This document shows, piece by piece, positions 630-61,031 of a DNA stretch of 63,925 nt. Location of the stretch: positions 66,444,741-66,508,665 of the forward strand of contig NC_068986.1 in assembly GCF_001194135.2 (NCBI RefSeq), given 5' to 3'. Origin of the DNA: Octopus bimaculoides (lineage: Eukaryota). The notes beneath the pieces were generated by a model that had not been told where the DNA came from, ran no database searches, and saw nothing but the letters and a program-made list of their open reading frames with translations. Each line of letters opens with the position of its first letter. The stretch's first letter is position 1. Both the position numbers and the translations under genes were made by a program.

Positions 630-2790
630 AGGGGTCTTGATTTTGTTTTTGCATGCTTAGACGATATCCTTATTGCAAGCCAAAATGCAGAGCTATACAA
701 GAAGCATCTAGAGGTTCTTTTTGATAGACTGGAATAGTATGGCCTAGTAATCAACCACACCAGATGTACTTTTGGTGTTAGAGAAATTGACTTCCTGGGA
801 CATCAAATCACAGGTGCTTGTGCTACGCACCTGCCAGCAAAAGTGAAAGCTATCTTATCCTTTTCATACTCCACCACAAGCAAGGCTCTACACTAATTTC
901 TGGGTATGGCAAACTTTTACCATCACTTCATTCTTTCTGCAGCAAGAGTGATGAGACCCCTATACACTGTCAAAGATGGTTCAAGAAAACAGGTGGAGTA
1001 GGATGGTGCAATGACCTCAGCTTTAAATCCACAAAACAAGCCCTGGCTAAAGCAATCATGCTGTCCCATCCTCATATGTCAGCTTGGACTGCACTCACAG
1101 TCGATGCCTTCAACACAGCCATTCAGGGTGTTTTGGAACAACACATCAATGGTCAGTGGTGACCACTTGCCTTCTTCAGTCAGAAACTACGACCTCCTGA
1201 ACAGAAATACAGTGCTTTTGACAGGGAACTGCTAGTTATCCATCTAAGAGTCTGCCACTTTCACTATTTTCTTGGAGGTTGCACGTTTACAGTGTTCACA
1301 GACCACAAACCACCTTTGCTATGAACAAGCTTTGGAGCCTTGGTCTGCATGCCAGCAATGACAGCTATTAGCCATTTCTGAGTACACCACAGGCACGTAG
1401 CTGGAAAAAGCAACACAGTCACCAATGCACTGCTTTGTGCCCCTACCTGCTCTCACACCTACCTAGCCCCAATAATGGAAGGCCTGGATTATGAGGCAAC
1501 AGACAGATGACGAGATCAGGGCCTACTGCACTGCTATCATGTAAATTTCCTTGCAGGATATGCACCTTGGCTCCAATAGCACAATCTTACTGTGTGACAT
1601 ATCTACTGGGAAGCCACAACTGATCATCTCATTAGCCTGGTGCAAGAAGGTTTTTGACATCATTTACCGACTGTCCCACCCAGGTACTAGAGCCACATGG
1701 TGCCTGCTATCAAGCAAATTTATCTCGCACGGTATGGCCAAGCAAATTGGGGAGTGGACCAAGACCTGCATCCCCTGTGAACAAGCCAAGGTATATCAGC
1801 ACACTAAAGCACCCCCACTTGGCAACTATGAACCACCACAGGCCCATTTCAGCCATGTCAACATTGATCTTGTTGGCCCCCTACCACCTTCGCAGGGGTG
1901 CTTGTACCTACTGGCCTTGGCAGACTTCTACATTCATTGGCCTGAGGTTATACCTCTCTGCTGCACAGAAATACAAGAAGTCAGCTGAGCCTTCATCACA
2001 AACTGGATTGCCTGTTTTGGTATCCCAGACAACATCGCATCCAATCAGGGTCTACAATTCATCTCAAAGCTGTAAAATGACATGTGTGACCTTTTTGGAA
2101 TCACAATGAAGTGCACAACAGCCTACCATCCACAGGCCAATGGGTTAGTGGAGAGATTCCACTACTGCCTGAAGGAATCCCTGATAACCAGACTTAACAG
2201 GCTCAAGTGGCTTGATCAACTTCCATGGGTGATACTAGGAATCCATACCACCCCAACGAAAATCTCAATACTTCTTATGCAGAAATGGTTTATAGTGCCC
2301 TTCTTACAGTGTCAGGAGAGTTCCTTCTGAACGTGAAGCCAGACCCAGATGTCAAAAAGTACCTCACACAACTGAGAAACAGTGTGGGCCAGTTGTGCCC
2401 TATTCCCATGTCAACACATGGCACACCTAGATCATCTGTACCAAATAACCTCCACACTGCTAACTTCGTGTTCATTTGATGTGACACACAACAAAAACCC
2501 TCCAGTTACCCTATGATGGCCCATATGAAGTCATATGTCTGGGAGACAAATCATTCCAACTCCTAATTGGTGGGTGACAAGACAGTTTCTATTGATAGGT
2601 TGAAACCAGCCCATTTCAATATTGACAGCTCCATCCAAGTAACTCAACCACCAAACAGGAGCCACCCCAAGCAAATCACACCAACCCTTGGCAAGGAGTA
2701 GTCACCAATGAGCCAAATAACCACACACACACGTGCAGGGCAGTTAAAAGGCTTTCCCAGTTCCAATGACAGTCAACAGTTCTGGTGGGG
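630..2790 (+). mobile_element. Ty3/Gypsy LTR retrotransposon, decayed pol (RT-RNaseH-integrase), 5' truncated
   Basis: Frameshifted translations include FACLDDILIAS (degenerate YxDD), VDAFNTAIQGVLEQ (RNaseH), HPG..ATW..CIPCEQAK (integrase zinc finger), FSHVNIDLVGPLPPSQG and TTAYHPQANGLVERFH (integrase core). Many stops and frameshifts. Confidence 0.95.
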
Positions 2791-33387: not shown

Positions 33388-33515
33388 NNNNNNNNNNNNN
33401 NNNNNNNNNNNNNNNNNNNNNNNNNNNNNNNNNNNNNNNNNNNNNNNNNNNNNNNNNNNNNNNNNNNNNNNNNNNNNNNNNNNNNNNNNNNNNNNNNNNN
33501 NNNNNNNNNNNNNNN
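33388..33515. other. Assembly gap
   Basis: Run of N. Other gaps at 34634-35105, 45366-45689 and 53622-53817. Confidence 1.
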
Positions 33516-34633: not shown

Positions 34634-36979
34634 NNNNNNNNNNNNNNNNNNNNNNNNNNNNNNNNNNNNNNNNNNNNNNNNNNNNNNNNNNNNNNNNNNN
34701 NNNNNNNNNNNNNNNNNNNNNNNNNNNNNNNNNNNNNNNNNNNNNNNNNNNNNNNNNNNNNNNNNNNNNNNNNNNNNNNNNNNNNNNNNNNNNNNNNNNN
34801 NNNNNNNNNNNNNNNNNNNNNNNNNNNNNNNNNNNNNNNNNNNNNNNNNNNNNNNNNNNNNNNNNNNNNNNNNNNNNNNNNNNNNNNNNNNNNNNNNNNN
34901 NNNNNNNNNNNNNNNNNNNNNNNNNNNNNNNNNNNNNNNNNNNNNNNNNNNNNNNNNNNNNNNNNNNNNNNNNNNNNNNNNNNNNNNNNNNNNNNNNNNN
35001 NNNNNNNNNNNNNNNNNNNNNNNNNNNNNNNNNNNNNNNNNNNNNNNNNNNNNNNNNNNNNNNNNNNNNNNNNNNNNNNNNNNNNNNNNNNNNNNNNNNN
35101 NNNNNATATATATATATATATATACGATGGGTTTCTTTCAGTTTACGTCTACCAAATCCACTCACAAGGCTTTGGTTGGCCCAAGGTTATAGTAGAAGTC
35201 ATTTGCCCAAAGTGCCACGCAGTGGAACTGAACCTGGAACCATGTGGTTTGTAAGCAAGCTACTTACCACACAGCTACTCCTATGCCTATGGTGAACTTC
35301 TTTCAGTTTCTGTCTATCAAATCCATTCACAAGGCTTTGGTTGGCCCGAGGCTATGGTAGAAGATACTTGCCAAAGGTGCCATGCAGTGGGACTGAACCT
35401 AGAACCATGTGGCTGGGAAGCAAGCTTCTTACCACATAGCTACTCCTGTGCCTATATATATTGATTTCTTCCTTACATACAAGAACATTATTAGGTGGAG
35501 AGGAATTCCGTCAACTGATCAGTGAAAGTGAATTACTGGTAAAAGAGAGAGAGAGAGGAGGGGGACAAAAATGTTGCGATGTTCAGGTGTAAGTAAAATA
35601 GCAATAAACTAGCATCATAACTAGGCCAGAGTTGACTAACCAAGGGCTTATATTCTACTCAATGGTGTTCACAGAATGAAACACAAATGGTATGGATTTT
35701 AGAAAGAGTATATAAAACTGTTGCAGGCAAGGCTGTGTAGTTAAGAAGTTCACTTCACAACATGGTTTTGGATTTGATTCCACTGAGTGGTTCTATACTC
35801 TATTTTAATCTTAAGCTGATCAATGGCTTGAGATTAAAATCTCAATGGCTTGAGAATTTAATCTCAATGTAAGTGTGTGTGTGTGTGTGTGTGTGGTGGT
35901 AGTGGTGGGGGTTGTGAGGGAAATTTGGTAAATGGAAAGTATATGGAAGCCTGTCGTGTGGCTGTGTAGTTAAGAGGCTTGCTTCCCAACCATGTGGTCT
36001 TGGGTTCAGTCCCACTGCAACACATTAGGCAAATGTCTTCTGCTATAGTCCTTGTCAACTTTGGTTGCCCTGTGAGTGGATTTAGTAAATGGAAACTGAA
36101 GGAAACCTGTTGTATGTGTGTTTGTGTCTACCTTGTCTAGACATTATGTGAAAATTGTAAATGAACAATATAATTTCTAGTCTTTGGGGAGGGGATAAGT
36201 TGATTATATTGATCCTAGTGTTCAGCTGATCCTCATTTAATGGATTCTGAAGAGATGAAAGGTAAAGTGAACCTCAGTGGAATTTGAATTTAGAATGTAA
36301 AGATGGATGAAATGCTACTAAGCATTTTGCGCAGTGTTATAACAATTCTGCAAACATGCCACCTTAACATGAAATTAAATATATTAGCTGAAAATAAAGT
36401 TTGGCATCAGGGAGGACATCTGGCTGCAGAATAATACCTCAAGAAGTCTCAATTAACTCATGTCAGTATGGAAGCATACACAAAAACAATAATGATGAAA
36501 TGGTAACATATAATTGTTTTTTAAATATTTTAGAATTTCATAAATGAGATTTTACGTATGTATAAAAATAAAAATAAACACTGTATAATTGATTTCATAC
36601 ATTGACTGACGGGCAACAGTTTACAGGGAAAGGGTATCGACTCATTGAATTCATTGCAGTGCATGACTTTGTAAATACTTCATCAATCCTGGTTGGTTGA
36701 AAGGCAAAGTTGACAGTAGCAATTAGTGGTGCTAGTGGGGGCGTCTTTTCCGTCAAGAGGGTAGGTAATGTCAATGACCTTTCACAGGACCTCTGAAATT
36801 AGTGCAAAGGATGGAGGGAAGGTATCCTCAAACCAAAGACCTTTCCTGAATGTTTGCAACAGAGTGGACTCCATTAAAGACACTGAAAGTACCAGGTAAT
36901 GGTGTTAAACTGGGTGAAAGATTAAGCCTACCACCCAGATTTGAATTCAGAATGGAGATGGATGAAATAAAAATTGGCA

Positions 36980-40452: not shown

Positions 40453-42843
40453 CTGTGAAAAAAAACATACAGTTATATAAAATTAAATTTCAATGAATCA
40501 AACATCAAATAGCTCCTTAATGTTTGAGTGACAACATTAAATAATTACAATCTTTAACATGACTGATGAATAAATCTTTAAGGTGGCTTTGAAGTAGAAG
40601 TTTATATTTCCAATATAAGGTTTCAAAACGATTAACAATATCGAAACCTATGTTAGAAGTAAAGATTAAGGTTCTGAGTTCAAACATAGCCTAAACAAGT
40701 GTATACATTCTCTCTTTTACAAACACACACATACAAGTGTGTGTGTATGTGTTGTAAAACTCTGCTGTCTCACATTAATTTCTTTCCTTTCAACTTTTCC
40801 CTGAAGAAATGCTCATCCAAAACATTGGATTTTTCAATCCCCACAGCAAGTTCACTGCACTCACTTTATTGATTTTACTATATAATATAAATCTTGCTGA
40901 TACAGACCAATACCAGCCTCTTTGGAGTCTGATCTCTCTTTCTCTCTCTCTCTCACACACAAACACATAAATATATACATACATATATGATGCCATGTAA
41001 AAAGCATTGTGCTGGTGCCACATTAAAAGCACTGTGCTGATACCACATAAAAGTACCCAATACACTCTGTAAAAGGGCTGGCATTAGGAAGGGCATCCAG
41101 CTGTAGAAACCATGCCAGACCAGACAATGGAGCTTGTGCAGCCCCTAACCTTACCAGCTCTTGTCAAACTGTTCAGCCTATGCCAGCATGGAAAACAAAG
41201 AATTGGGTGGAGTAAGTTCAGGGCACTATTATCTCTGTTGGTGATAAAAGTGAAAAGCAGATTGTATGATGCTTGTAGACAAACATCAATGCTACATGCA
41301 GAGGAGATGTGAAAACTAGAAAGGAATGAGTCTAGTAAGCTCTGATGGATGTGCAACCTCAGTGTGCAGGTACAACAAAGAACGAAGGTATTGAAGGAAA
41401 AATTGGACACAAGAGGAATCAGACTTAGTGTGCAAGACAGAAGATGCATATGGATGACAACAACTGTTGTACAGAAGAGCCAATCACTTAAAGTGATAGT
41501 ATTTGTGGAAGAGGGAGACCCAGGAATACATGGGACAAAGTAGGAAGGTTGATCTCAAGATGTTGAGTCACACAGTGAAGATGAAGGACCAAGATGACTG
41601 GTGTTTCATAGAGATCGATAAAACTCATTAACCAAAATGAAAGTGAGGCCCTAAAAGCATTCTGCTTATGTCTCTACACTCACTAGGCTCTGGTCCAGCA
41701 CTCAGCCTATGTAAAGTGGCTGGCATTAGGAAGTGCTTCCAGCCATAAAAACCATGCCAAAACAGACAAAATGGAGCCTGGACAGCTCTCAAGCTGACTA
41801 GTTCCTGTTAAGCCATCAAGGTATCCACACCTCTCATCTTTTTAATGCCCATCCCTCAATCACTTTTCAAACAGCTGCAGTAATCATATAACAGCAGAAT
41901 CTGCACATATTTCTTCCCCTTTCTGCTATTAGTTACCTCCCTCTCTCCTGAAACTACCTCCTTTAACATCTATCTCTCATTCCCAATATCATCCTTTCCT
42001 ACTTTATTTTCTATTGATCACCTCTTTCTGTACCTCCAGTTGTTTCGCCTTCATATCTGAGCTACATCTTAGGACTATTATTCTTCATTTTTAACACCCA
42101 CCATATCTTGTCGACGGCTCTCCCAATGTTTCTCCACTCACTATAGCCACCACTATGTATCTCTAACCACCATCTCTGTCCCTGTATATCTTACTCAATC
42201 AGCACATCATCTTCCTATTTTGCAATCTATCCACAGGTTTTCCATATTTCCTGATCTATCAAAAAATTATTACACTATTGCACTCTATCCCTCCTGTTAC
42301 TGCTGACCACTTCGTAGATCCCCAGCACCACTCTTGTACATCATTTATTACATTAACTTCTAAATTTAATCACCTGTCCCACTCTTATCACTCTCATCAT
42401 CATCATTATTTAACATCCGTTCTTCATACTGGCATGGGTTGGATGGCTTAACAGGAACTAGTCAGCTTGAGAGCTGTCCAGGCTCCATTTTGTCTGTTTT
42501 GGCATGGTTTTTATGGCTGGAAGCACTTCCTAATGCCAGCCACTTTACATAATGTACTAGGTGCTTTTAATGTGACATTGACATGGGCACTTTTATATGG
42601 CACTGGCACAGGCGCTTTTATGAGACACTGGCACAGGTGCCTTTGCATGGCACTAGCACACTTCAGTTCATATTTTCAAGTACAATCATTTTCTTGTACC
42701 TTGAAGGTATGCTCTAACACATCATCAACATCCTTATCTCTTTTTCAGTTACTCCCACCCACTTCAATATAATTTTCTGAAATCATTACTCATCAATGTT
42801 ATTCTCACAAACTTTATATTAGAATCAAAATCTGAATACTCAC

Positions 42844-44465: not shown

Positions 44466-45689
44466 TCATTAATTTTGGTTGAAAAAAAAAAGACAGGGGA
44501 GGTAACTCTGAAAATTAAATTAATTACAAACAGAATGCAAGTATGCAGTAGAGTATGAGCTTCATCTTTTACAAGTAATGGCAGTGTTGTCAACATTCTC
44601 TTTCTCCATTGGGCTATCACACAATTTTCGATCGATCAATTAAATTTTCTCTCTTCTGTTTGTTTTATCTATCAATCTATTTATCCTTCTCCAACGAATA
44701 CTTTTTCCACTTCTGTATGTCAACTGCAATCACTGAGGTTGTCTTTCTTTGGTAGCGCCCCTTGTGGGTAATAAAAATTTTTGTCTTTCTTTGGTAGTTT
44801 AACTACTACACCCTTTGTCTACTCTTCTAGCACTGCTCTGTTTTCCCAACAGGTGTTGCAATCATTTGGTTAGATCTTGTACCGTGGTGTTTCCTTCGTT
44901 CTTCAGTAACACAGAATACTCAAGATCATTTACAGGAACAGAATCACAAACTCTGAAGTCCTGACAAGAGCCAATTTGTGCAGCATGCTAGAGATTGTGG
45001 CAAAAAGAATTAGACTGGCAGGTCATGTCTTTTCTCCTAACTGCCACTAGAATAAGTACCCAAGACAGCTATACAATGGTTACAACCAAAAGGATGAAAA
45101 AAGAGAGAGATATACAAAAAGACAAGGCATGCCACCTTCAAAGATCTGAAGAAACTTAGCATCCTTGGGAAGATCTATGCGACTATGCTCAAAACTGGGA
45201 TTATTGAAGATGTCTTGCTGCCAATATACAAACCAACTGTATGGAAGGGACTAAGACTAAGCATACCTATGAATGAAATAACTAATTATATCTAAGAACA
45301 GAGTTCTAGTGATGGTAGAATATAATTGGGTTTAGAAGAACTGAATGAGAGAGAGAGAGAGAGAGNNNNNNNNNNNNNNNNNNNNNNNNNNNNNNNNNNN
45401 NNNNNNNNNNNNNNNNNNNNNNNNNNNNNNNNNNNNNNNNNNNNNNNNNNNNNNNNNNNNNNNNNNNNNNNNNNNNNNNNNNNNNNNNNNNNNNNNNNNN
45501 NNNNNNNNNNNNNNNNNNNNNNNNNNNNNNNNNNNNNNNNNNNNNNNNNNNNNNNNNNNNNNNNNNNNNNNNNNNNNNNNNNNNNNNNNNNNNNNNNNNN
45601 NNNNNNNNNNNNNNNNNNNNNNNNNNNNNNNNNNNNNNNNNNNNNNNNNNNNNNNNNNNNNNNNNNNNNNNNNNNNNNNNNNNNNNNNN

Positions 45690-45741
<52 letters not shown>

Positions 45742-45958
45742 AAGTTGTCAGAATGATTAAGGCATTGGATCATGCTTCCATTCTTGTGTCTGGATTTTAC
45801 CATTCTGGATAGTCACTAATTTTTGCTCTAATAAATCATAGTTATTTATTTAAATTTGAAGAATTATTAAAACTCAAGGATTGTTGATGAATTTCATGCT
45901 TGTTATGAGAAATTAGATAAGGAAGTGGTAATGAATAAGGAGTTTTAATTACACAAAC

Positions 45959-46036
45959 CTAAGTTGAAGTCATCAAGAATCTTCACAGTATCAAATTCAA
46001 GGCCTTTAGATTTGTGGGCAGTAGTGAAGACCATTT
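45959..46036 (-). CDS. FBH1: FBH1 exon, helicase motif V
   Basis: ttttattttag|EMVFTTAHKSKGLEFDTVKILDDFNL|gtttgt, phase 1 to 1. Confidence 0.95.
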
Positions 46037-46606
46037 CTAAAATAAAAGAAAAATTAAGAGAAAAAAATAACAAAAAGAAAAATGCAAAAAGAAAAACACA
46101 CACACACAAAAAAACCCCCCAACATTATCATTCTTGTCATCATTTAATGTTCCTTTTTCCATACTTGCATGGGTCAAAGAGAATTTGATGAAGTAGATTT
46201 TATGCAACTGGATGCCTTTCCAATTACCAACCCTCACCTGGTTCCAAACAAAGTAATACTTTCCTATGGCCAGACATGTGTTTCTTAGAAGACTGGAAAC
46301 AAATGACATCACCAGTATTATGAAGATGCTTGTTTATGACCGTCACATGATGTCAAGACAAGGATTTACATGAACACACATATGGATATATCTACTAATC
46401 TGTAATATTATTTTGCTTGTAATGGTGTTGCGTATTGAAGTCCTATGCTTTAAACAATCTTAAATATGGAGCAAAATTGAAATTATTAACATAATTTGCT
46501 TACTGGAGTAATCAAGTTTCAATGGAGTTGTAATGGCATCATTGTAATATAATGTACACCAGACTTCACTATTTGACATGGTTGTGTGCCAGATATTGGA
46601 TCAGTT

Positions 46607-46772
46607 TTAACCCTTTAGCATTCAGATTAATCTATCAACAGTAATGCTTATTTATTTACATTGTTTCAAATTAACTATGCATTATCTCATGACTTCAAGA
46701 TGTCAATGAAGTGGTAGCTTATTTTGCATAACATTGCATATTTGGGCCAGATAAGGCCTGCTCAAAGATTAA
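46607..46772. mobile_element. piggyBac-type MITE
   Basis: TTAA|ccctttagcattcag ... ctcaaaga|TTAA. Confidence 0.6.
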
Positions 46773-46789
46773 TAATTTTCCTCATTCAT

Positions 46790-47035
46790 TACTTGTCACT
46801 GATCATCTTTTCTGCTATCTGGCACTCTATAGTTTCCTAAAGAATGGTCTTTGTAAGATCTTGTTACATGGCTATAACATCTCAGCTCTCTTTTCTTTAC
46901 TGCTGTGTGAAGTTCATCATGGAGACCAATGTGATGCTGGATGGGTTTCTGAACCTGCTCATTTGTGATATGGTCTGAGTATGTGATACTTAAGATGCTG
47001 CAGTAACATCTCATTTCTAGTGCCTGCATTTTTCT
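46790..47035 (-). mobile_element. RTE-like LINE fragment
   Basis: QALEMRCYCSILSITYSDHITNEQV...VKKRELRCYSHVTR. Confidence 0.8.
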
Positions 47036-47040
47036 TTGAA

Positions 47041-47621
47041 ATTATGTTCTGAAATTCCTTTATGTTTTTTTTCATATATCAAGGGAACTACTGGTTTTGG
47101 ATTGAATGTGCTTCGTGATATCCATTCTCTATTAGTTGGTGAAAGCCCAGTTAAAGGTAACACTTTGTCAAGCATTACTTCTTTATCAGTAGTAAATAAG
47201 TAAATGTCTCCTAATCCTGGCTGTGATGCTCCCCAACTACTCTTGCTCATGATTAGAGATGCACATATTGTCAGCCACTAAGGGACATGCTCAAGTGACT
47301 GACAAGCAAATCTGTGGTATTGCTATAACAATATTTCTGCTTCAGCAACTCAGCACTGTTTGAAATGTAATGGAACATATATCAGTTTCAAAACATTGAT
47401 GTCCAGGTCACAAAAGCAAAGTTTGAAGGGAATAGTAGGCATTTCCTTTGATTTCTAGATAGAAACAAATAAGAAATGACACTTACTGACCAAAGAAGAA
47501 ACATATAAAAATTTTGTTACACAGTGTGATAGAAGCCACCCAAGATATCATGCAGTGAGGTTGCACCTGAAACTACATGAATACCAATTAAATGTCCTAA
47601 CTACAGAACCATGTCTGTGCC
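47041..47621 (+). repeat. Inverted copy of 49810-50392, including an antisense copy of an FBH1 exon (47084-47156)
   Basis: Reverse-complement match over ~580 bp with only scattered mismatches and small indels. Confidence 0.97.
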
Positions 47622-48850
47622 GATTCTGAAGCACATACATACAACAAAATGGAGAGTACCAGACACAACAGTCTGAATTTGCTCTTCATGGTAATGTTTC
47701 TACCTCTCCATTGTTTGGTTTGCATGGACTGTGTACATCTTGTAAAAATTTCTGGGTTGACCCTTTATCATTAATGATTGTCCTCAAAGATTTGTGTTGC
47801 TACTATCTTTAGTTTCTGTCCTTGTACAGAGAAGTCTGTTTTGATGATTGTAAAGTCATATTATATAATTAGTTCTGAAGAACTCTCACTGCCATTCTTG
47901 TTCGTCTTGTGGTCATTTTAATGATTTTTCTTCATGCAGACATAAGTTTATGAGTTAAATATATTTCAAATAGGCATATTGTCATTCTTCACCAGGGTCA
48001 AACATCCTGAGATCCAAACTCACTGCTTCTGCTTTATTGGCCTTTCTTGCCAAGAATAATTGCCCAGTACACATATTTTTCAACCAACAGATATTGTCCA
48101 GTCACATTACATGGCCATATGATATAAATAATAATAATAATAAAAAAATGTAAATTAAGAAAACATCTAGGCATTAAGGAAATGTATCAGTGTGCAAAAA
48201 TGGCAGCTTCACTCTTATGGTCATGTGATGTGAATGGGCAATATCTATTGGTTCAAAAAATATGTACCAGGCAGCCACGACATGCACCTTATATGTCATG
48301 AAAATTGACACTGCATGTCCAAACAACTTTTTTCAACTTATTACCTTAAGCTATATAACTCTCAGATAATGGGCTATGAGTGTATAAGTTCAAAAGATAT
48401 ACTGTATTGTGTTTATGAACAGTAGCTGTATGGTTAAGAAGTTAGCCTTGTAATCACAAGGCTTTGAGTTCAATCCACCGCATGGTACTTTGAGCACTTG
48501 AGCAAATGTATTCTACTATAGCCTCAAATTGATCAGTTTGAGTAGAATTTGGTAGATAAACTGTGTGAAGAAGCCTTTCACATATGTGTCTGTGTTTATA
48601 CCAATCTAAAAATTAGTTTGTTTATACTGTGTCCCTTTCTTTCCTATAACATATTGGTTTGACAAATAAAGAACAGTAGAGTAAATATCAGATTGACATA
48701 AGTACTAGGGTTGACATGAAGGAGGCACCCCAGTATGACTGCTGTTCAATAACAGAAGCCCATGAAAGATTAATGCATTATAACCCACTCGATCCATAAG
48801 TTATAATTTTAAATTTAATCATAAGTCACATTTACAAAAAGATAACTTAC

Positions 48851-49036
48851 CAGCATCTCGAATTTCTTTTATTTCTGACTCCTGGAAGAAGTTTAGGATC
48901 TTTGGCAGATGAATGGCATATGTCTGTGCAATTTGAATCTGTCCCAGCAGCTCATAGTCACAAGAGTGTTCAGCATATCGTTTCAAAGCATGAAAACTAG
49001 AGAACCGAGCAACAAAACTAGGTTTGTTCTGAGAGG
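48851..49036 (-). CDS. FBH1: FBH1 exon
   Basis: ctttgtattgcag|ASQNKPSFVARFSSFHALKRYAEHSCDYELLGQIQIAQTYAIHLPKILNFFQESEIKEIRDA|gtaagt, phase 1 to 1. Confidence 0.88.
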
Positions 49037-50278
49037 CTGCAATACAAAGAATATATTAATACTCATGTAAGATTGGCCAGAAGAAGAATGGTTGAAATCC
49101 CTCATCCAAACTATAATAATTAATAAGAATGTTAAAAGATTAAACATATCAATTACAAAAGGAAAGGCATGCCTATGTGATAAAAAGTTTGCTTCCCAAC
49201 TATGTGGCTCAGGGTTCAGTTCCATGAGTGGCACCTTGGGCAAGTGTCTTCTACTATAGCCTCAGGCTGACCAAAGCCTTGTGAGTAGATTTGGTGGATG
49301 AAAATTGAAAGAGGCTCATCTTATATGTGTGTGTGTGTGTTTGTTTGTCTCCCATCATCACTTAACCACTAGTGTTGGTGTGTTTACATCCCCATAACTT
49401 AGCAGTTTGGCAACAGAGACTGGTAGAATAAGTCTGACTAAAATTCTTCAAGATGGTGCTCCATCATGGCCACAGTTGAATGACTGAAAAAAAAATACAG
49501 AAAAGACAATTCTACTCATCAGCTCTTTCAAATAACAGTTGGTATGTTGCTGTGGTTAAAATTAACTGGGAGCTTGTATTAAGTATATACAAGGTAAAAA
49601 TCTGGAATTAGAGGAAATTGATGATGATCTCATGTCAATAACAGTTGGACATTAGGAGAGACCATTGAAGCACTTTGTAAATTCAGTTGTTTTGAAGAGT
49701 GAAGAACTTAGTGTTTCAAGATTTGCCCTTCAGTGGGTGGTAATTGTATTTAATGAACTGTTTAAGTATTTAGACCAGTGAATAAAGGTCTATTGATATA
49801 TGGATAATTGGCACAGACATGGTTCTGTGGTTAGGACATTTAATTGGTATTCATGTAGTTTCAGGTGCAACCTCACTGCATGACATCTTGGGTGGCTTCT
49901 ATCACAGTGTCATAAAATTTTAATATTTTTCTTCTTTGGTCAGTAAGTGTCATTTCTTATTTATTTCTATCTAGAAATCAAAGGAAATGCCTACTATTCC
50001 CTTCAAACTTTGCTTTTGTGACCTGGACATCAATGTTTTGAAATTGATATATGTTCCATTACATTTCAGACAGATTCAGTGCTGAGTTGCTGAAGCAGAA
50101 ATATTGTTATAGCAATACCACCGATTTGCTTGTCAGTCACTTGAGCATGTCCCTTAGTGGCTGACAATATGTGCATCTCTAATCATGAGCAAGAGTAGTT
50201 GGGGAGCATCACAGCCAGGATTAGGAGACATTTACTTATTTACTACTGATAAAGAAGTAATGCTTGACAAAGTGTTAC

Positions 50279-50351
50279 CTTTAACTGGGCTTTCACCAAC
50301 TAATAGAGAATGGATATCACGGAGCACATTAAATCCAAAACCAGTAGTTCC
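50279..50351 (-). CDS. FBH1: FBH1 exon (73 nt; the duplicated exon)
   Basis: ttttttcatatatcaag|GTTGFGFNVLRDIHSLLVGESPVK|gtaaca, phase 0 to 1. It is needed to connect the 51854 donor (phase 0) to the 49036 acceptor (phase 1). Confidence 0.85.
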
Positions 50352-50954
50352 CTTGATATATGAAAAAAAATAAAGGAATATCAGAACATAATATAAGAAT
50401 ATCAAAACATGAAACATAAGTGAAATATGGTAATGTACTTGATGCTATATGTTACATTGCTATGTTAACTTGTAGAAAACCATTGGGATCTTGCAGATGA
50501 CCCATCTTCAATGTAAAACCTAAATTCAAATGATCATTGACCAATCAGAACAAAAGAGATGCAAACAGAACAAATGAATCCTGATATAACAGACCTAGAA
50601 CAAGTGTCTCAGATGTGACCATCCAGTCTTTTACAAGAATAGTGTGACAGGACTACATTGTCCAACTTATCATTCTTTTTTGTTAAGGAGGTAGCATGTG
50701 GTTTGAGGGAAATTCAACCAATATCTTTAGCAGGTCAAGCAACTGTGAAGAGACACCTTAGTTAGTTTCTAAAAACCTAATTGTAACACTGAATACCAAT
50801 CCTCCAGTAAAAACCACTTCCAAAGAATGACTCTTAATCAATGTAACAATGAAGAGGAATGTGAGAAAAAGTGCTTTCTTTTTTTGTCTGTTTATCACAT
50901 TTTTTTTTTTACATAAAAGGTTACTATGCTTTGGATAATTCTGAAAATGTTAGA

Positions 50955-51515
50955 TTAAACCTTTAGCATTTAAACTGGCCATATTTGGCCAAAATATTCT
51001 ATCTGTGTTATGTTCAAATTGGTCAGATCCAGCCTCTCATATTTACCTTAAAATGTCATTGTAAAAATAAACAATCACATCATGAAATCTTGAAGCTATG
51101 AGATAACACATGATTAATTGAAAACAATGTGAATGAATAACCATTACATTTGGCTGAAAGCTCATGGTTCAGGGGTTAGGGTGTCGGGCTTACAATTGTC
51201 AGGTTGTGAGTTTGATTCCTGGACTGGGCTGTGTTGTATTCTTGTGCAAGACACTTTATTTCATATTGCTCCAGTTTACTCAGCTGTAGAAATGAGTTGT
51301 GATGTCATTGGTGCCAAGCTGTATTGGCCTTTGCCTTTCTCTTGGATAACACTGGTGGTGTAGAGAGGGAAGGCTGGTATGCATAGGTGACTGCTGGTCT
51401 TCCATAAACAACCTTGCCCAGAACTTTCTAGGTACAATCCCATGGTCATTCATGACCAAAGTGGGTATTTAACCTTTTTACATTTGAGTGAGTAATCTGA
51501 ATGCTAAAGAGTTAA
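50955..51515. mobile_element. piggyBac-type MITE with nested SINE D (51165-51470)
   Basis: TTAA|acctttagcatt ... aatgctaaagag|TTAA. Confidence 0.75.
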
Positions 51516-51853
51516 GTACTGTATCTGCTCAAGCTAGATTAAAGGAGACAAACTCAGAAATGTATGGAAAATGATCTTAAAACACTTGTTATTGATAGGT
51601 TGAAAGACAAAGTCAAATCTAGTTGAACCAGAACAGGATCTGAGAAAGGCAAAGTCAAATAAGTGTAACGTATTTAGTATTGGTACTTGACAATCTATAG
51701 ATAATTTCATTATCTTTTAACAAGATGAGATTGATTAACTAAAACATGCAAGTTATGTTAGTATTGATATATCTCTTGAACATTTTGCATAACAAACTCA
51801 AAGTAAACTTCATATGTTGAAAAATGAAAAATATTGATAAAACGAATTTTTAC

Positions 51854-51978
51854 CCCAACAAAAGCCATTTTTATTCGAGGTTTTTTGTTGTAACCAAGCT
51901 GGACTGCTTCAGAAAATAGTGTAAAGTTGCACCGAGCAATGTAAGCAAGTTGTCCAATAGTTTCCCCTTTGATAGTTG
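51854..51978 (-). CDS. FBH1: FBH1 exon
   Basis: ttttttctacag|STIKGETIGQLAYIARCNFTLFSEAVQLGYNKKPRIKMAFVG|gtaaaa, phase 1 to 0. Confidence 0.9.
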
Positions 51979-54539
51979 CTGTAGAAAAAACAAAATTCAA
52001 AATATAAGCTAAATGGTAACTGTAAGAATATTGTAGTAAGTTATAAATTGCTCAGTTTTATTCTTTCTTTTAATGGTAACTACAAATCTTAGTAGAGTGA
52101 AATAGTGATTTCATGCTATCACAGAAGTTCTATATTTTTGAGTGGGGGAAATGTAATGTGCTGCTCAGGATTTTCGAGCGAGATCGTTGCCAGTGCCCCT
52201 GGACTGGCTCTTGTGCGGGTGGCACATAAAATACACCATTTTGAGCGTGGCTGTTGCCAGTACCGCCTGACTGGCCTTCGTGCGGGTGACACGTAAAAGC
52301 ACCCACTACACTCTCTGAGTGGTTGGCGTTAGGAAGGGCATCCAGCTGTAGAAACTCTGCCAAATCAGATTGGAGCCTGGTGTAGCCATCTAGTTTCACC
52401 AGTCCTCAGTCAAATCGTCCAACCCATGCTAGCATGGAAAGCGGACGTTAAACGACGACGATGATGATGATGATGATGATTTCCTCAAATGTAAATGAAG
52501 TTAAATAGTCTCAATCAGGAATTGAAACAATATTGCTGTCTTGACTTGTCTGATGCTTAATGTTCCTTTAGTGGCACATGTTACAGTGGTGTAACCATTT
52601 AATTATCATCCAGTTGAACTCACTCAGATTTTCTCAACTCAATCACACTGGCCATCATAACTCCAACTAACATTTGGAAGTCAGCAGAGCAACATCCAGT
52701 GCCTGTACAGAACTAGTTGATGAAGATTTTTGTTGGACAGCTGACTTCATCATCATCATCGTTTAACGTCCACTTTCCATGCTGGCATGGGTTGGACGGT
52801 TTGACTAAGGACTAGCGAGCCAAATGGATGCACCAGGCTCCAATCTGATCTGGCAGAGTTTCTACAGCTGGATGCCCTTCCTAACATCAACCACTCCGAG
52901 AGTGTAGTGGGTGCTTTTATGTGCCACCAGCATGAGGGCCAGTCAGGCGGTACTGGCAATGGCCACGCTCAAATGGTGTTTTCCACGTACCACCGACACA
53001 AGTGTCAGTAAGGTGATGCTGGTAACGATCACACTCGAATGGTACTCTTTATGTGCCACCGGCACGGGGGCCATGCAGCGGCCCTGGCCACGATCACACT
53101 TGGATGGTGCTCTATGCGCTCTACTAGCACGGATGTCAGTCATGCAGTGCTGTCATTGAATTCGATTCCGATTTCCCTTGCCTCAAAAGGTTTCCAGAAG
53201 CATAATTTAGTGTCCAATGAAAGAAAGGTATGCCTGGCTCTCAAGCAGTGTCCTGCATAATGTATGTGCCTCTCTCAAATGATATTAGTGATTTTGAGAA
53301 GACTGCTATACAATCTTTGTTTGGTCAGATACTTTTCCAGGAAATATTCAAAATGATACAATGGTGTGAATATCATTAAAGTTTGCCTTTAGGTGTTAGG
53401 TGAGTGTTTAAGCAGTGAACCCACACATAGCACTGATTCCTCAGATGCACAAAAGAAATTTCTTTTCAGCTTGCTTGAAGCCCTCAAGAACAGATCATGC
53501 TTTTGCGAGAAATAACTTAGTTATCATCATCATCATCATCATCGTTTAACGTCCGCTTTCCATGCTAGCATGGGTTGGATGATTTGACTGAGGACTGGTG
53601 CAACCGGATGGCTACACCAGGNNNNNNNNNNNNNNNNNNNNNNNNNNNNNNNNNNNNNNNNNNNNNNNNNNNNNNNNNNNNNNNNNNNNNNNNNNNNNNN
53701 NNNNNNNNNNNNNNNNNNNNNNNNNNNNNNNNNNNNNNNNNNNNNNNNNNNNNNNNNNNNNNNNNNNNNNNNNNNNNNNNNNNNNNNNNNNNNNNNNNNN
53801 NNNNNNNNNNNNNNNNNCGCCAACCACTCAGAGAGTGTAGTGGGTGCTTTTACGTGTCACCCGCACGAAAACGGCCACGCTCGAAATGGTGTCTTTTATG
53901 TGCCACCCGCACAAGAGCCAGTCCAGGGGCACTGGCAATGATCTCGCTCGAAAACCCTACAAGGCCAGTCAGGCGGTACTGGCAACGGTCACGCTCAGGA
54001 TGGTACATCTTATGTGCCACCCGCACAAGAGCCAGTCCAGGGGCACTGGCAACGATCTCACTTGGCTTGTGACAAGTAAATATAAATATATTACTTAAGA
54101 TTTTTCACATCATCTGGTTTACTATTGATTGCTTAACAAAAAAAAAAAAAGTTAGTCAAGAGAAATGGAAGAAGAGGAGGTAGAAGAAGAGGAGAAACAA
54201 TGCTCTTCAGCTTCACAGGTTCTTCCAGACTGGTGAGATTGATGTAACTGATGTCTAGCCTGAAATCTGAATATGCTACTACTATATTAGTAAGAAAAAC
54301 TTGGGTGGAGAGAGAACATGAGTGTTCTAACCTAAATACATATAATAGAGTGAACTTCATTAATGGTACCAGCTAAAAAACTAATTATGATTTCAAATAT
54401 TTAAGTTTTTTGTACAAAATCAAGAAAGGTAATCAAAATATAATTAAACAGATACTCTGAGTCTTCTGAAACAGTTTCTATATTCTGGAAATTTGCTGCT
54501 CAGAAATTAATGGCAAAATAGAATCAGTAAGTAACTTAC

Positions 54540-56741: not shown

Positions 56742-58019
56742 CTAAAATAGATAACATTTAAGCACTTAGAATAAAAGACAACAAAGTTCATTAAACAAAG
56801 TTTTACTGAAAAGAATCCGTCGACAAACTGTTAATTAAAGAGAGACAAATCATTTTCATTATCAGCAATATCTTCGTCAAAACTATTAACCAATAATATG
56901 AATACAATACGATTGTTAGAACACTAATTTTTCTGGATATGTTAGAGAGTCTAAGAGAGATAATTCTTCCATGCAATTTTATTTTTTACTCATCAAGTGC
57001 AAAATTAAATTTCATGCTTATTCGAGTAATCATCATCATCGTTTAACGTCCGCTTTCCATGCTAGCATGAGTTGGACGATTTGACTGAGGACTGGTGAAA
57101 CCGGATGGCAACACCAGGCTCCAATCTAATTTGGCAGAGTTTCTACAGCTGGATGCCCTTCCTAACGCCAATGATGTTAAATATCTACCAAGAAAAACAA
57201 AAGTATTTGTGTTTCCTTCAAGTTACGTAGCCTAAATAGATTCGACATGTCTCAACAACGATTAGTTTCAACATGAGACATTCCTCAAGAAAAGATAGAT
57301 TGGTATATAAACACTTCCCACAATAAAAGAGTTAAGGAACTTCGATACAATGTTGCAAAGTCGTACTTTTAAATGTGTGTGTGTGTGTGTATGTGCGTGC
57401 GCGCGCTAGTGTGTGTATAGATAGATAGATAGATAGATAACGATGCAAATAAACAAATAAAGAAGCTTGGGCTTGACATATAAAATATACACATATATAT
57501 ATATATACATGTAAATAGAGAAACATAGACTGAAAATATTCAGACAATGAATATTCATGTATAAATATATATTTATATATTATCAGAGCATATTTACACA
57601 GAGTACAAACACACAGAAAACTAAGAGGAAAAGGTATGGTATTACAGGCCTGACAGCTGTTTCTGGGGGCTTGGAGTTATGTAATAATGTTGGCAGATAG
57701 AGTTTGTACAAGAATATGCAATGAGTAATGGATGCATATAAACACTACAGAAAATCTGGCTTCCATCTTCTGGGTGGAGAGATTGGTATCTAACATTTCA
57801 AGATCATAATGTAGGAAAATTTGAAGGTAGAATGGAGAAGAGGAAGGTCAATAGAAGTGGAGGGAGGAGTAGGCAGCTGACGTGTGTGTGTGTGGGGTGG
57901 AGTGGGTGGGGTAGGGGTAGTGTTAAAATAAAGGACAAGAAGAAATAAAAGAGAAAGAGCAAGAAGAGGGAGAGAGTTAGTGACCAAAGTATTGAGAGAT
58001 GTAGAAGTGGTGAGTTGAG

Positions 58020-60370: not shown

Positions 60371-60812
60371 ACCATATAACTCCTCATAACTTTTTTAACT
60401 TCAGAAATTTTCAGAAAATGTTTGTGAATTTGTGATCTACACACAGGAGTTAATACGATTATGTAAAAACCTCAAAAGATTAGTGATATAAGAGCTATTT
60501 AGCTATCTATTTAGTTTTTTATTTTTAGCACATCTCATGTCCACCTCATACATTTCTCGTTTGTTTATCACTCTGACATATTGATGTTTTCCAATATCTT
60601 TCTCCACATAAACCTATTTAATGGTCTATTAGTGGGATTTAAGTTAAAAATTCAGACAGCCTAAATTTCAAACTGTGATTGAAAAAAAAATTTCTAAAAA
60701 TTAAAAAAAATTTTGTTTTCATAGTCATGTGAATTTCTGTGTGTAGAATACAAATTTTCAAAAATTTTCTGAAGCTTCCAAAAAATAGGAAAATTATGAG
60801 GGCTTATATGGT
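60371..60812. mobile_element. MITE
   Basis: accatataactcctcataa / ttatgagggcttatatggt with further arm similarity. The same end motif occurs at ~10120-10136. Confidence 0.7.
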
Positions 60813-61031
60813 ATACTAGAAAAAGCACTCACTACCCTCTGTAAAGTGGTTGGCATTAGAATGAGCATCCAGCTGTAGAAACTGTGCCAAAATAAGACAT
60901 TGAAGCTTGACGTAGTCTTCTGATCTGACAGATCTTGTCAAACCATCCAGCCCATGCCAATATGGAATACAGATGCTAAATAATGATGATGATTATGACA
61001 TGAATCAAAACACATTTGTAAACCCACTTAC

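What the first reader, a model, noticed from the sequence alone, without database searches (positions are those of the whole stretch)
47041..50392. Inverted duplication of a whole FBH1 exon gives the pre-mRNA its own antisense partner
Seen: 49810-50392 and 47041-47621 are ~580-bp inverted copies, roughly 96-97% identical by manual count, with a perfect stretch of ~195 bp. The sense copy holds the 73-nt coding exon 50279-50351, ~40 nt of upstream polypyrimidine tract and ~470 nt of downstream intron. The antisense copy keeps the exon and both splice signals (47084-47156) with two substitutions (TTT Phe vs TTG Leu; CTC vs CTT). The 2.2-kb loop contains the next exon (48851-49036). Known: long intramolecular duplexes are ADAR substrates, coleoid cephalopods recode mRNA extensively by A-to-I editing, and flanking inverted repeats promote exon skipping and back-splicing. 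Inference: the duplex could act as an editing-complementary sequence for the exon (many codons are editable, and editing the acceptor A would kill the splice site). It could instead hide the exon; skipping 73 nt or 73+186 nt shifts the frame and would act as an NMD switch on a DNA-repair helicase. It could also drive circularisation of the looped 186-nt exon.
Basis: partly seen in the sequence, partly recalled or inferred. Interest (0 to 1): 0.85.

Follow-up and report, generated by a model that had tools for sequence, protein, structure and literature searches.

The report
Inverted exon copy beside a LINE
A 585-bp piece of a DNA-repair helicase gene (one coding exon plus its flanking intron sequence) sits a second time, back-to-front, two introns downstream and joined to a truncated jumping-gene fragment, so the gene's primary transcript could fold on itself, but nothing yet shows this is used rather than an accident.

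Summary
Window 47041-47625 (+) and 49806-50392 are inverted copies: 567 of 581 aligned bases are identical, with 3 indels and a 199-bp perfect block. There are only two copies in the window, and both lie in one gap-free contig. The sense arm holds a real 73-nt exon of an FBH1-type helicase on the minus strand (E=4.8e-65 to solved FBH1). The copy keeps both splice signals and differs in the exon by two substitutions. The 2180-nt loop holds the next exon, which is 186 nt.

New here: the copy's left breakpoint coincides, within 0-3 nt, with the 5' truncation point of a non-LTR retrotransposon ORF2 tail in the opposite orientation. This is the topology of LINE "twin priming", so the copy is most likely a by-product of a retrotransposition event. 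The copy's exon part is no better conserved than the rest.

Folding pairs 564 positions, including both splice sites. Hyper-editing by ADAR, exon skipping and back-splicing of the looped exon are therefore reasonable predictions, but none could be tested here. Nor could I test the taxon, independent reads or orthologous loci. I rate it a new member of known kinds, of moderate interest.

The parts
49806..50392 (-). Sense arm (source copy): 41 nt of upstream intron 3' end (polypyrimidine tract, AG, likely branch point), the 73-nt exon, and 473 nt of the downstream intron 5' end
50279..50351 (-). 73-nt coding exon of the FBH1-type helicase (GTTGFGFNVLRDIHSLLVGESPVK, phase 0 start, 1 nt carried over)
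47041..47625 (+). Inverted copy of the arm. It is helicase-sense on the plus strand, so it is antisense within the minus-strand pre-mRNA. It lies in the intron that follows the 186-nt exon
47084..47156 (+). Pseudo-exon inside the copy. AG and GT are kept. There are two substitutions: TTT>TTG (F>L) at 47104 and CTC>CTT (synonymous) at 47113
47626..49805 (-). 2180-nt loop between the arms. It contains the 186-nt exon and SINE-family copies (48404-48595, 49165-49500)
48851..49036 (-). 186-nt coding exon in the loop (ASQNKPSFVARFSSF...EIKEIRDA). Acceptor TTGCAG|CC, donor GCTG|GTAAGT. Skipping it alone stays in frame
46799..47041 (-). Post-RT tail of a non-LTR retrotransposon ORF2. It is 5'-truncated at the copy's left breakpoint, and its sense strand is opposite to the helicase-sense strand of the copy. 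The 3' UTR extends leftwards to at least about 46590
51854..51985 (-). Upstream neighbouring exon (...KGETIGQLAYIARCNFTLFSEAVQLGYNKKPRIKMAFVG). The donor GTTGGG|GTAAAA is at 51854. The 5' boundary is approximate
45954..46036 (-). Downstream neighbouring exon (EMVFTTAHKSKGLEFDTVKILDDFNLG). The acceptor TTTTAG|AAATGG is at 46036. The 3' boundary is approximate

Best explanation
This is a young local inverted duplicate of one FBH1 exon with its flanking intron sequence. It sits 2.2 kb downstream in the same gene and is fused at its outer end to a 5'-truncated LINE in the opposite orientation.

Most likely origin: both pieces arrived in one retrotransposition event. First-strand cDNA copied the LINE RNA from the left nick. 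The 3'-OH on the other side of the break primed a second synthesis on the unspliced helicase pre-mRNA tethered at that site, or on nearby DNA. This is twin priming. The arrangement is therefore an accident of LINE activity, not a purpose-built element.

Consequence: every primary transcript contains a 585-nt, 97.6%-matched stem closing a 2.18-kb loop. How much of it forms depends on a race with co-transcriptional splicing.
- If the stem forms first, it buries the branch point, the acceptor and the donor of the 73-nt exon. It also offers a long duplex to ADAR, giving promiscuous A-to-I editing of both arms, exon included. And it brings together the splice sites around the looped 186-nt exon, favouring its skipping or back-splicing.
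- If the first two introns are spliced first, only the 73-bp exon:pseudo-exon duplex (-123 kcal/mol) remains possible.

Shown: the sequence anatomy, the LINE junction and orientation, and the folding potential. Inferred: a single-event origin, and every RNA-level outcome and its size.
For: - The repeat is real and unique in the window.
- The exon and gene are real.
- 46799-47041(-) has 1246 relatives at E<=1e-3. In longer relatives, the matching stretch lies 65-120 residues after the end of Pfam RVT_1 (P0159, P0121).
- tblastn of RT-bearing relatives hits only 47041->46856 and nothing right of 47625. The LINE therefore ends at the breakpoint and was not split by a later insertion.
- The orientation is opposite, which PMC13174262 (text to its Figure 7, read) gives as the signature of twin priming, as against template switching.
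- The substitution spectrum between the arms is ordinary, with no A>G excess. The exon part is not conserved beyond the rest.
- No TIRs flank the copy.
- The fold pairs 564 positions including the splice sites.
- Nearby inverted copies are the main ADAR substrates across metazoans (PMC9989829).
[quoted passage not shown] Inverted repeats of 30-40 nt are enough for this (PMC4201285, abstract listed).
Against: - No target-site duplication was found around the LINE+copy composite, and the LINE's 3' end is not defined.
- No clear microhomology is visible at either junction.
- The 199-bp perfect block is somewhat longer than uniform mutation predicts (P=0.014). That could reflect gene conversion, assembler collapse or constraint.
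- The scaffold is a gapped draft, and I could find no independent assembly or reads.
- A DNA-level template switch gives the same product and cannot be told apart from an RNA template.
- No RNA evidence of any kind is available.
Confidence: 0.55

Rival explanations
1. One reading: the antisense copy is a functional regulatory element, kept by selection. It would act as an editing-complementary sequence that recodes the exon, as an NMD switch that hides the 73-nt exon, or as a driver of a functional circRNA from the 186-nt exon.
For: - The geometry and energetics fit all three roles.
- 11 of 18 exon adenosines would recode, including the conserved Asp of the D-I motif that aligns with FBH1.
- The perfect block covers part of the exon and the adjacent intron, and it is longer than expected (P=0.014).
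- The arrangement has been tolerated long enough to accumulate about 2.4% divergence.
Against: - The LINE-joined, twin-priming-like origin points to an accident.
- The copy's exon part is not better conserved than its intronic part (2/73 versus 15/518, P=1).
- One of its two exon changes is non-synonymous, and both create mismatches in the duplex.
- A 585-bp near-perfect duplex predicts non-selective hyper-editing, unlike the short imperfect duplexes of site-selective recoding (own knowledge).
- There is no cross-species or RNA evidence.
- The cephalopod premise is unverified.
Confidence: 0.1
2. Assembly artefact: only one copy exists. The second is a diverged haplotype or a read-through chimera that the assembler placed upside-down in a draft scaffold.
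For: - The window is a gapped draft, with N-runs at 33388-33515, 34634-35105, 45366-45689 and 53622-53817.
- The 199-bp identical block exceeds typical k-mer and short-read lengths, so that stretch may have been resolved only by pairing information (inference).
- No independent assembly could be found.
Against: - Both arms and the loop lie in one gap-free stretch, 45690-53621.
- The arms differ by 14 substitutions and 3 indels spread along their length, so two distinct sequences were read.
- Both junctions are sharp and run into unique, non-gap sequence.
- The left junction is a biologically sensible LINE 5' truncation, which an assembler error would not create.
Confidence: 0.1
3. A DNA-level inverted duplication unrelated to the LINE, made by a replication template switch (fork stalling or microhomology-mediated break-induced replication) or by filler-DNA capture during break repair. 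On this view the LINE sits at the breakpoint by coincidence, or only because it created the break.
For: - The source and the copy are only 2.2 kb apart and inverted, the usual outcome of short-range template switches (own knowledge).
- No TSD or poly(A)-type tail supports classical target-primed insertion.
- The copy is colinear with genomic DNA, so nothing requires an RNA template.
Against: - The LINE's 5' truncation point and the copy's end coincide within 0-3 nt, and the LINE does not continue beyond the copy. This is hard to explain if the two events are independent.
- The relative orientation is the one twin priming predicts.
Confidence: 0.2
4. The hairpin is a precursor of endogenous small RNAs (hpRNA or proto-miRNA type) that silence FBH1 mRNA through the 73-nt exon sequence.
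For: - Inverted duplication of a gene fragment is the known birth route of hpRNA loci and young plant miRNA genes (own knowledge; hpRNA context in PMC10317233, listed).
- The stem is long and nearly perfect.
Against: - The structure is intronic and nuclear, with a 2.2-kb loop that carries an exon. It is not a separate transcription unit.
- Only 73 of 585 nt would match mature mRNA.
- ADAR editing of such duplexes antagonises dicing (own knowledge).
- No small-RNA data are available.
Confidence: 0.04

Closest known systems
Inverted-repeat dsRNA in pre-mRNAs (IRAlu-type ADAR hyper-editing substrates)
   Same: Two inverted copies lie a few kb apart in one transcript and form a long, near-perfect intramolecular duplex. 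This is the main class of ADAR substrate across metazoans (PMC9989829).
   Different: The arms are not transposon copies. They are a unique gene segment that includes a complete coding exon with its splice signals, so hyper-editing would reach coding sequence and splice sites rather than only intronic or UTR repeats.
Exon-intron editing-complementary-sequence duplexes (GluA2 Q/R-site type)
   Same: A coding exon pairs with a complementary sequence in a downstream intron, so editing must happen before that intron is removed. After fast splicing, the 73-bp exon:pseudo-exon duplex (-123 kcal/mol) would have this configuration.
   Different: Known ECS duplexes are short and imperfect, lie in the adjacent intron, are conserved and are site-selective (own knowledge). 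This one is 585 bp, 97.6% matched, young, two introns away, and shows no sign of conservation.
Intronic reverse-complementary matches that drive back-splicing and exon skipping (Alu pairs; C. elegans zip-2; mouse Sry inverted repeats)
   Same: Complementary sequences in the introns on both sides of an exon bring its splice sites together (PMC8330042; PMC4201285). Here 473 and 469 nt bracket the 186-nt exon. As at Sry, the repeats are a locus-specific duplication rather than a dispersed repeat.
   Different: One arm also contains the preceding exon and its splice sites, so pairing competes with normal use of that exon as well. No back-splice evidence is available.
LINE twin-priming chimeras and 5' inversions
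   Same: A 5'-truncated LINE abuts a non-LINE segment in the opposite orientation. PMC13174262 states this as the hallmark of twin priming and reports antisense mRNA/LINE-1 chimeras without splicing features.
   Different: The partner would be unspliced pre-mRNA, or DNA, from the very gene being hit, 2.2 kb upstream of the insertion site. The element is a non-L1 invertebrate-type LINE. No TSD was found.
hpRNA or proto-miRNA loci born by inverted duplication of target-gene fragments
   Same: An inverted duplicate of part of a gene yields a long hairpin with sequence identity to that gene's mRNA.
   Different: Here both arms lie inside the parent gene's own introns and exon, the loop is 2.2 kb, and small-RNA production is unknown.

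Membership tests
FBH1 (F-box DNA helicase 1) | UvrD-type SF1 helicase motifs in the canonical order | tested here: met
   [33 protein letters not shown] and VAITRAK lie on the minus strand in order. Pfam gives UvrD-helicase, UvrD_C and UvrD_C_2.
FBH1 (F-box DNA helicase 1) | Closer to FBH1 than to other UvrD-family helicases | tested here: met
   Solved FBH1 9xzj_F matches at E=4.8e-65 over query 4-281, against E>=4.6e-06 for every other helicase. The best named database hits are 'F-box DNA helicase 1(-like)'.
FBH1 (F-box DNA helicase 1) | N-terminal F-box domain | tested here: inconclusive
   Pfam found no F-box in the four upstream minus-strand open segments I scanned, out of many between 57 and 63.8 kb. 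Small exons and sequence beyond the window end were not covered.
Intramolecular inverted-repeat ADAR substrate | Two inverted copies in one transcription unit, a few kb apart, predicted to form a long duplex | tested here: met
   Both arms lie between mapped exons of the same minus-strand gene. The loop is 2180 nt. 564 pairs form in the MFE fold, and the duplex is -998 kcal/mol.
Intramolecular inverted-repeat ADAR substrate | Clustered A-to-G mismatches between RNA and DNA | not testable with these tools
   No RNA-seq or matched DNA reads are available.
Site-selective ECS duplex | Short imperfect duplex that positions one or a few adenosines | tested here: not met
   The duplex is 585 bp and 97.6% matched. 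The exon is paired at 71 of 73 positions, with only two mismatches.
Site-selective ECS duplex | Conservation of the complementary sequence across species | not testable with these tools
   No orthologous locus could be retrieved. Within this genome the exon part of the copy is not better preserved than the rest.
RCM-driven circRNA / exon skipping | Reverse-complementary sequences in both introns flanking the exon | tested here: met
   473 nt in intron 50278-49037 pair with 469 nt in intron 48850-46037 at -814 kcal/mol. They lie 769 nt and 1225 nt from the exon's splice sites.
RCM-driven circRNA / exon skipping | Back-splice or skipped junction reads | not testable with these tools
   No transcript data are available.
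LINE twin-priming chimera | 5'-truncated LINE directly abutting a non-LINE segment | tested here: met
   ORF2-tail homology runs up to 47041-47038, and the arm homology starts at 47041. There is no LINE sequence right of 47625.
LINE twin-priming chimera | The two segments lie in opposite orientation | tested here: met
   LINE sense is on the minus strand and helicase sense is on the plus strand. The criterion comes from PMC13174262.
LINE twin-priming chimera | Target-site duplication flanking the whole composite, and a defined LINE 3' end | tested here: not met
   No shared 8-mer was found, and no acceptable 10-14-mer with 1-2 mismatches, between 47626-47665 and 46037-46800. The only hits were in a CA-rich low-complexity run. 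The 3' end was traced only to about 46590. Many non-L1 LINE clades give short TSDs or none (own knowledge), so this weakens the case without excluding it.
hpRNA / endo-siRNA locus | Small RNAs of 20-23 nt mapping to both arms | not testable with these tools
   No small-RNA data are available.

The most novel reading that the evidence does not exclude
A LINE insertion reverse-transcribed the unspliced pre-mRNA of the gene it landed in. In one step this gave a coding exon a perfect intronic antisense partner, an 'instant ECS'. The host now uses it to recode or dose a DNA-repair helicase through A-to-I editing and splice-site masking. This would show a general route by which retrotransposition creates new editing or splicing switches at unique, non-repeat exons.
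Probability: 0.08. Interest if true: 0.7.

Novelty: new member of a known kind. Interest (0 to 1): 0.35.

Why it matters
If the stem forms in vivo, this locus is a clean natural experiment. It offers a long, nearly perfect duplex built from unique sequence, with a coding exon, its branch point and both its splice sites in one arm, and the next exon in the loop. One RNA-seq data set with matched DNA could show how editing, exon definition, exon skipping and back-splicing compete on one transcript of a DNA-repair helicase.

The LINE junction also offers a concrete, testable route by which retrotransposition could give an exon its own antisense partner. That bears on how exon-complementary sequences arise. 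My keyword searches found no described case of an exon's own inverted duplicate in that role, though such searches cannot prove there is none.

Without RNA or comparative data, it remains a well-characterised structural oddity whose parts and predicted behaviour all belong to known categories.

Tried and rejected
- Word-indexed protein searches with the two-exon peptide and with the LINE-tail peptide found nothing. Only the 299-aa concatenated peptide worked. No homologue above 48% identity exists in that collection, so no close relative's locus could be fetched.
- Exact look-up of ten small ORFs that span the breakpoints or lie in the arms, loop and nearby exons found none on record, so no independent assembly is available.
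- Source names for the nearest LINE-tail and FBH1 relatives were all unnamed ENA or Logan entries, so the taxon is not established.
- Pfam on the LINE-tail peptide itself gave nothing meaningful. Identity was established indirectly, through the exhaustive HMMER search followed by Pfam on the longer hits.
- One Pfam call failed because the DNA references contained stop codons, and one literature query was rejected for its syntax.
- The searches for a TSD and for microhomology were negative.
- A search for TIRs or other DNA-transposon marks around the copy was negative, so I rejected the idea of a Pack-MULE or Helitron-type gene-fragment capture.
- I rejected the idea that the copy landed in an older LINE, because no LINE remainder lies beyond 47625.
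- I rejected the idea that the arms are dispersed repeats, because only the two copies exist in the window.
- I rejected the idea that the copy came from hyper-edited RNA, because there is no A>G excess.
- I rejected the idea of a larger, older inverted duplication extending outwards. The 46607-46725 matches to 51064-51515 are only 80-84% identical, out of register, and belong to a repeat family.
- Rfam and tRNA scans of the window were empty.
- Literature searches for an exon-derived ECS, and for FBH1 in octopus, returned nothing relevant.
Full report
**1. The observation**

- The repeat finder reports three collinear inverted blocks that join into one pair, 47041-47625 and 49806-50392.
- BLAST of 49700-50500 against the whole window returns only itself and this partner, at 95.9% identity over 591 columns.
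- A global alignment gives 14 substitutions (8 transitions, 6 transversions) and three indels of 2, 6 and 2 bp. That is 567 of 581 aligned bases identical, with JC distance 0.0245.
- The longest perfect block is 199 bp, sense 50321-50123 and copy 47114-47312.
- Both ends of the homology are sharp.
- The window is a gapped draft scaffold with four N-runs. None lies between 45690 and 53621, so both arms and the loop sit in one contig.

**2. The gene and the exon**

Open segments on the minus strand carry UvrD-type helicase motifs in order.
- A concatenated 299-aa peptide hits 1485 proteins at E<=1e-10. The best named hits are "F-box DNA helicase 1(-like)" at 38-48% identity. Pfam gives UvrD-helicase and UvrD_C.
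- Against solved structures, FBH1 (9xzj_F) scores E=4.8e-65 over query 4-281. All other helicases score E>=4.6e-06.
- tblastn of homologues maps exons at about 56714-56547, 55043-54906, 54645-54544, 51985-51854, 50351-50279, 49036-48851, 46036-45954 and 42942-42856.
- The 73-nt exon (GTTGFGFNVLRDIHSLLVGESPVK) aligns in its proper place to P0001 residues 214-238 and to FBH1 "[24 protein letters not shown]". It is a genuine coding exon.
- Splice junctions and phases are consistent across 51854 | 50351-50279 | 49036-48851 | 46036.
- The copy's pseudo-exon (47084-47156, plus strand) keeps AG and GT. It differs by TTT>TTG (F>L) and CTC>CTT (synonymous).
- An F-box was not found in the upstream segments I scanned. 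That part of the family definition stays open.

**3. What flanks the copy**

Just outside the copy's left end, the minus strand encodes FQRKMQALEMRCY...RELRCYSHVTR (46799-47041).
- The exhaustive HMMER search finds 1246 relatives at E<=1e-3, 171 of them at E<=1e-10. The match starts at query residue 2.
- In longer relatives the matched stretch lies after the end of a Pfam RVT_1 domain. In P0159, RVT_1 covers 68-148 and the match covers 213-273. In P0121, RVT_1 covers 2-93 and the match covers 216-273.
- So this is the post-RT tail of a non-LTR retrotransposon ORF2.
- tblastn of these RT-bearing relatives hits only 47041->46856 and nothing to the right of 47625. The element is truly 5'-truncated at the breakpoint, within 0-3 nt. 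It is not an older LINE that the copy split.
- Its sense strand (minus) is opposite to the helicase-sense strand of the copy (plus).
- I found no terminal inverted repeats and no target-site duplication. The LINE's 3' end could be traced only to about 46590.

**4. Origin (inference)**

A 5'-truncated LINE joined head-on to a non-LINE segment in the opposite orientation is what twin priming produces. PMC13174262 states that RNA processing or template switching gives same-orientation chimeras, whereas twin priming gives opposite orientations. It also reports antisense mRNA/LINE-1 chimeras without splicing features.

Working through the strands, the steps would be as follows.
- First-strand cDNA (plus strand) grows rightwards from the left nick over the LINE RNA, up to 47040.
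- The minus-strand 3'-OH at 47626 primes a second synthesis that makes 47625->47041.
- The template of that second synthesis, read 5'->3', equals the sense, unspliced helicase pre-mRNA from 50392 to 49806.
- That RNA is tethered at the site, because the insertion point lies 2.2 kb downstream in the same transcription unit.

A DNA-level template switch, or filler capture at the LINE-induced break, gives the same product and cannot be excluded. The differences between the arms are ordinary point mutations with no A>G excess.

**5. Is anything selected?**

- The exon part of the copy is no better conserved than the rest: 2 events in 73 nt against 15 in 518 (Fisher P=1).
- The 199-bp perfect block is mildly longer than uniform placement of 17 events predicts (P=0.014). 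Gene conversion, assembler collapse over an identical stretch, or weak constraint could each explain this.
- With one genome, nothing more can be said.

**6. What the transcript can do (prediction)**

- The minimum-free-energy fold of the 3461-nt pre-mRNA segment pairs 564 arm-to-arm positions. It pairs 71 of 73 exon nucleotides, the acceptor A and G, and the donor G and U.
- A yUnAy branch-point candidate, with its A at 50381 (29 nt from the acceptor G at 50352), also lies inside the arm.
- Duplex energies: whole arms -998 kcal/mol against about -167 shuffled. Exon alone against pseudo-exon is -123, against -22.6 +/- 4.1 shuffled. The intronic parts alone are -814.
- The exon has 18 adenosines, 11 of them non-synonymous if read as G. 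One is the conserved Asp of the D-I pair.
- Reading frames: skipping the 73-nt exon, or both exons, creates early stops. Skipping only the looped 186-nt exon is in frame, removing 62 aa.
- Whether the stem forms depends on a race. The antisense arm is transcribed 2.2-3.3 kb after the sense arm. By then the 1502-nt and 1242-nt introns (lengths) may or may not have been removed. This point is inference.

**7. Background in the window**

- Other inverted pairs exist, but they are multi-copy repeat families at 73-95% identity or artefacts of N-runs.
- The exon-bearing pair is the longest and cleanest real one.
- Rfam and tRNA scans are empty.

**8. Comparison with known systems**

The predicted behaviour belongs to three known classes.
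- Inverted-repeat ADAR substrates (PMC9989829).
- Exon-intron editing duplexes.
- Repeat-driven back-splicing and skipping (PMC8330042; PMC4201285).

The inferred origin belongs to LINE twin-priming chimeras (PMC13174262).

What is unusual is the combination. The arms are unique gene sequence carrying a complete exon with all its splice signals, and the source is the very gene that was hit. It fails the test for a site-selective ECS, because the duplex is long and near-perfect. It also lacks the TSD expected of a textbook L1 event.

My keyword searches found no published case of an exon's own inverted duplicate serving as its partner, and nothing on FBH1 in octopus. These negative results are weak evidence.

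**9. What could not be done**

- The taxon was not established. The dsRNA mechanisms invoked are common to metazoans.
- No independent assembly, reads, orthologous loci or RNA data could be reached.

**10. Verdict**

The physical premises hold, but the functional claims are untested, and the LINE junction plus the lack of extra conservation favour an accidental origin.
- It is a new member of known kinds.
- Interest is 0.35: a neat, sharply testable locus without evidence of function.

Noticed in passing
window 41708-41817 and 42442-42551: A 110-nt perfectly complementary inverted pair, 624 nt apart, just downstream (in gene sense) of the VAITRAK exon (about 42942-42856). The sequence belongs to a multi-copy family also seen at 40956-41144 and 60797-60937.
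   Followed up: partly
window 52167-52474 with 52747-52973, 53523-54062 and 57029-57171: A multi-copy repeat family forms several 89-95% inverted pairs in the intron between exons at about 54544 and 51985, and beyond. This is a second, transposon-derived source of possible dsRNA in the same pre-mRNA.
   Followed up: partly
window 46607-46725 with 51064-51147 and 51478-51515: The 3' UTR region of the LINE fragment beside the copy has 80-84% inverted relatives about 0.7-1.1 kb beyond the sense arm. This gives a weak outer inverted pair that brackets both the 73-nt and the 186-nt exons. The matches are out of register with the main duplication, so they are not part of it.
   Followed up: partly
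window 49165-49500 and 48404-48595: SINE-like family copies lie inside the loop. The first has at least 15 relatives across the window at 69-86% identity. The two loop copies are in direct orientation to each other, so they do not pair.
   Followed up: partly
window 1551-2479 (+): A degenerate retroelement integrase region, frame-shifted across several ORFs (Pfam Integrase_H2C2 at 2.9e-08, rve_3 at 9.4e-05).
   Followed up: partly
window 33388-33515, 34634-35105, 45366-45689, 53622-53817: Four N-runs of 128-472 nt mark this as a gapped draft scaffold. Two of them lie inside introns of the helicase gene (45366-45689 and 53622-53817), so intron content there is incomplete.
   Followed up: yes
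whole window, protein level: The best FBH1 homologue in a 5.8-billion-protein collection is only 48% identical, and none of ten exact ORF products is on record. This species and its close relatives therefore seem to be missing from the searchable collections.
   Followed up: partly
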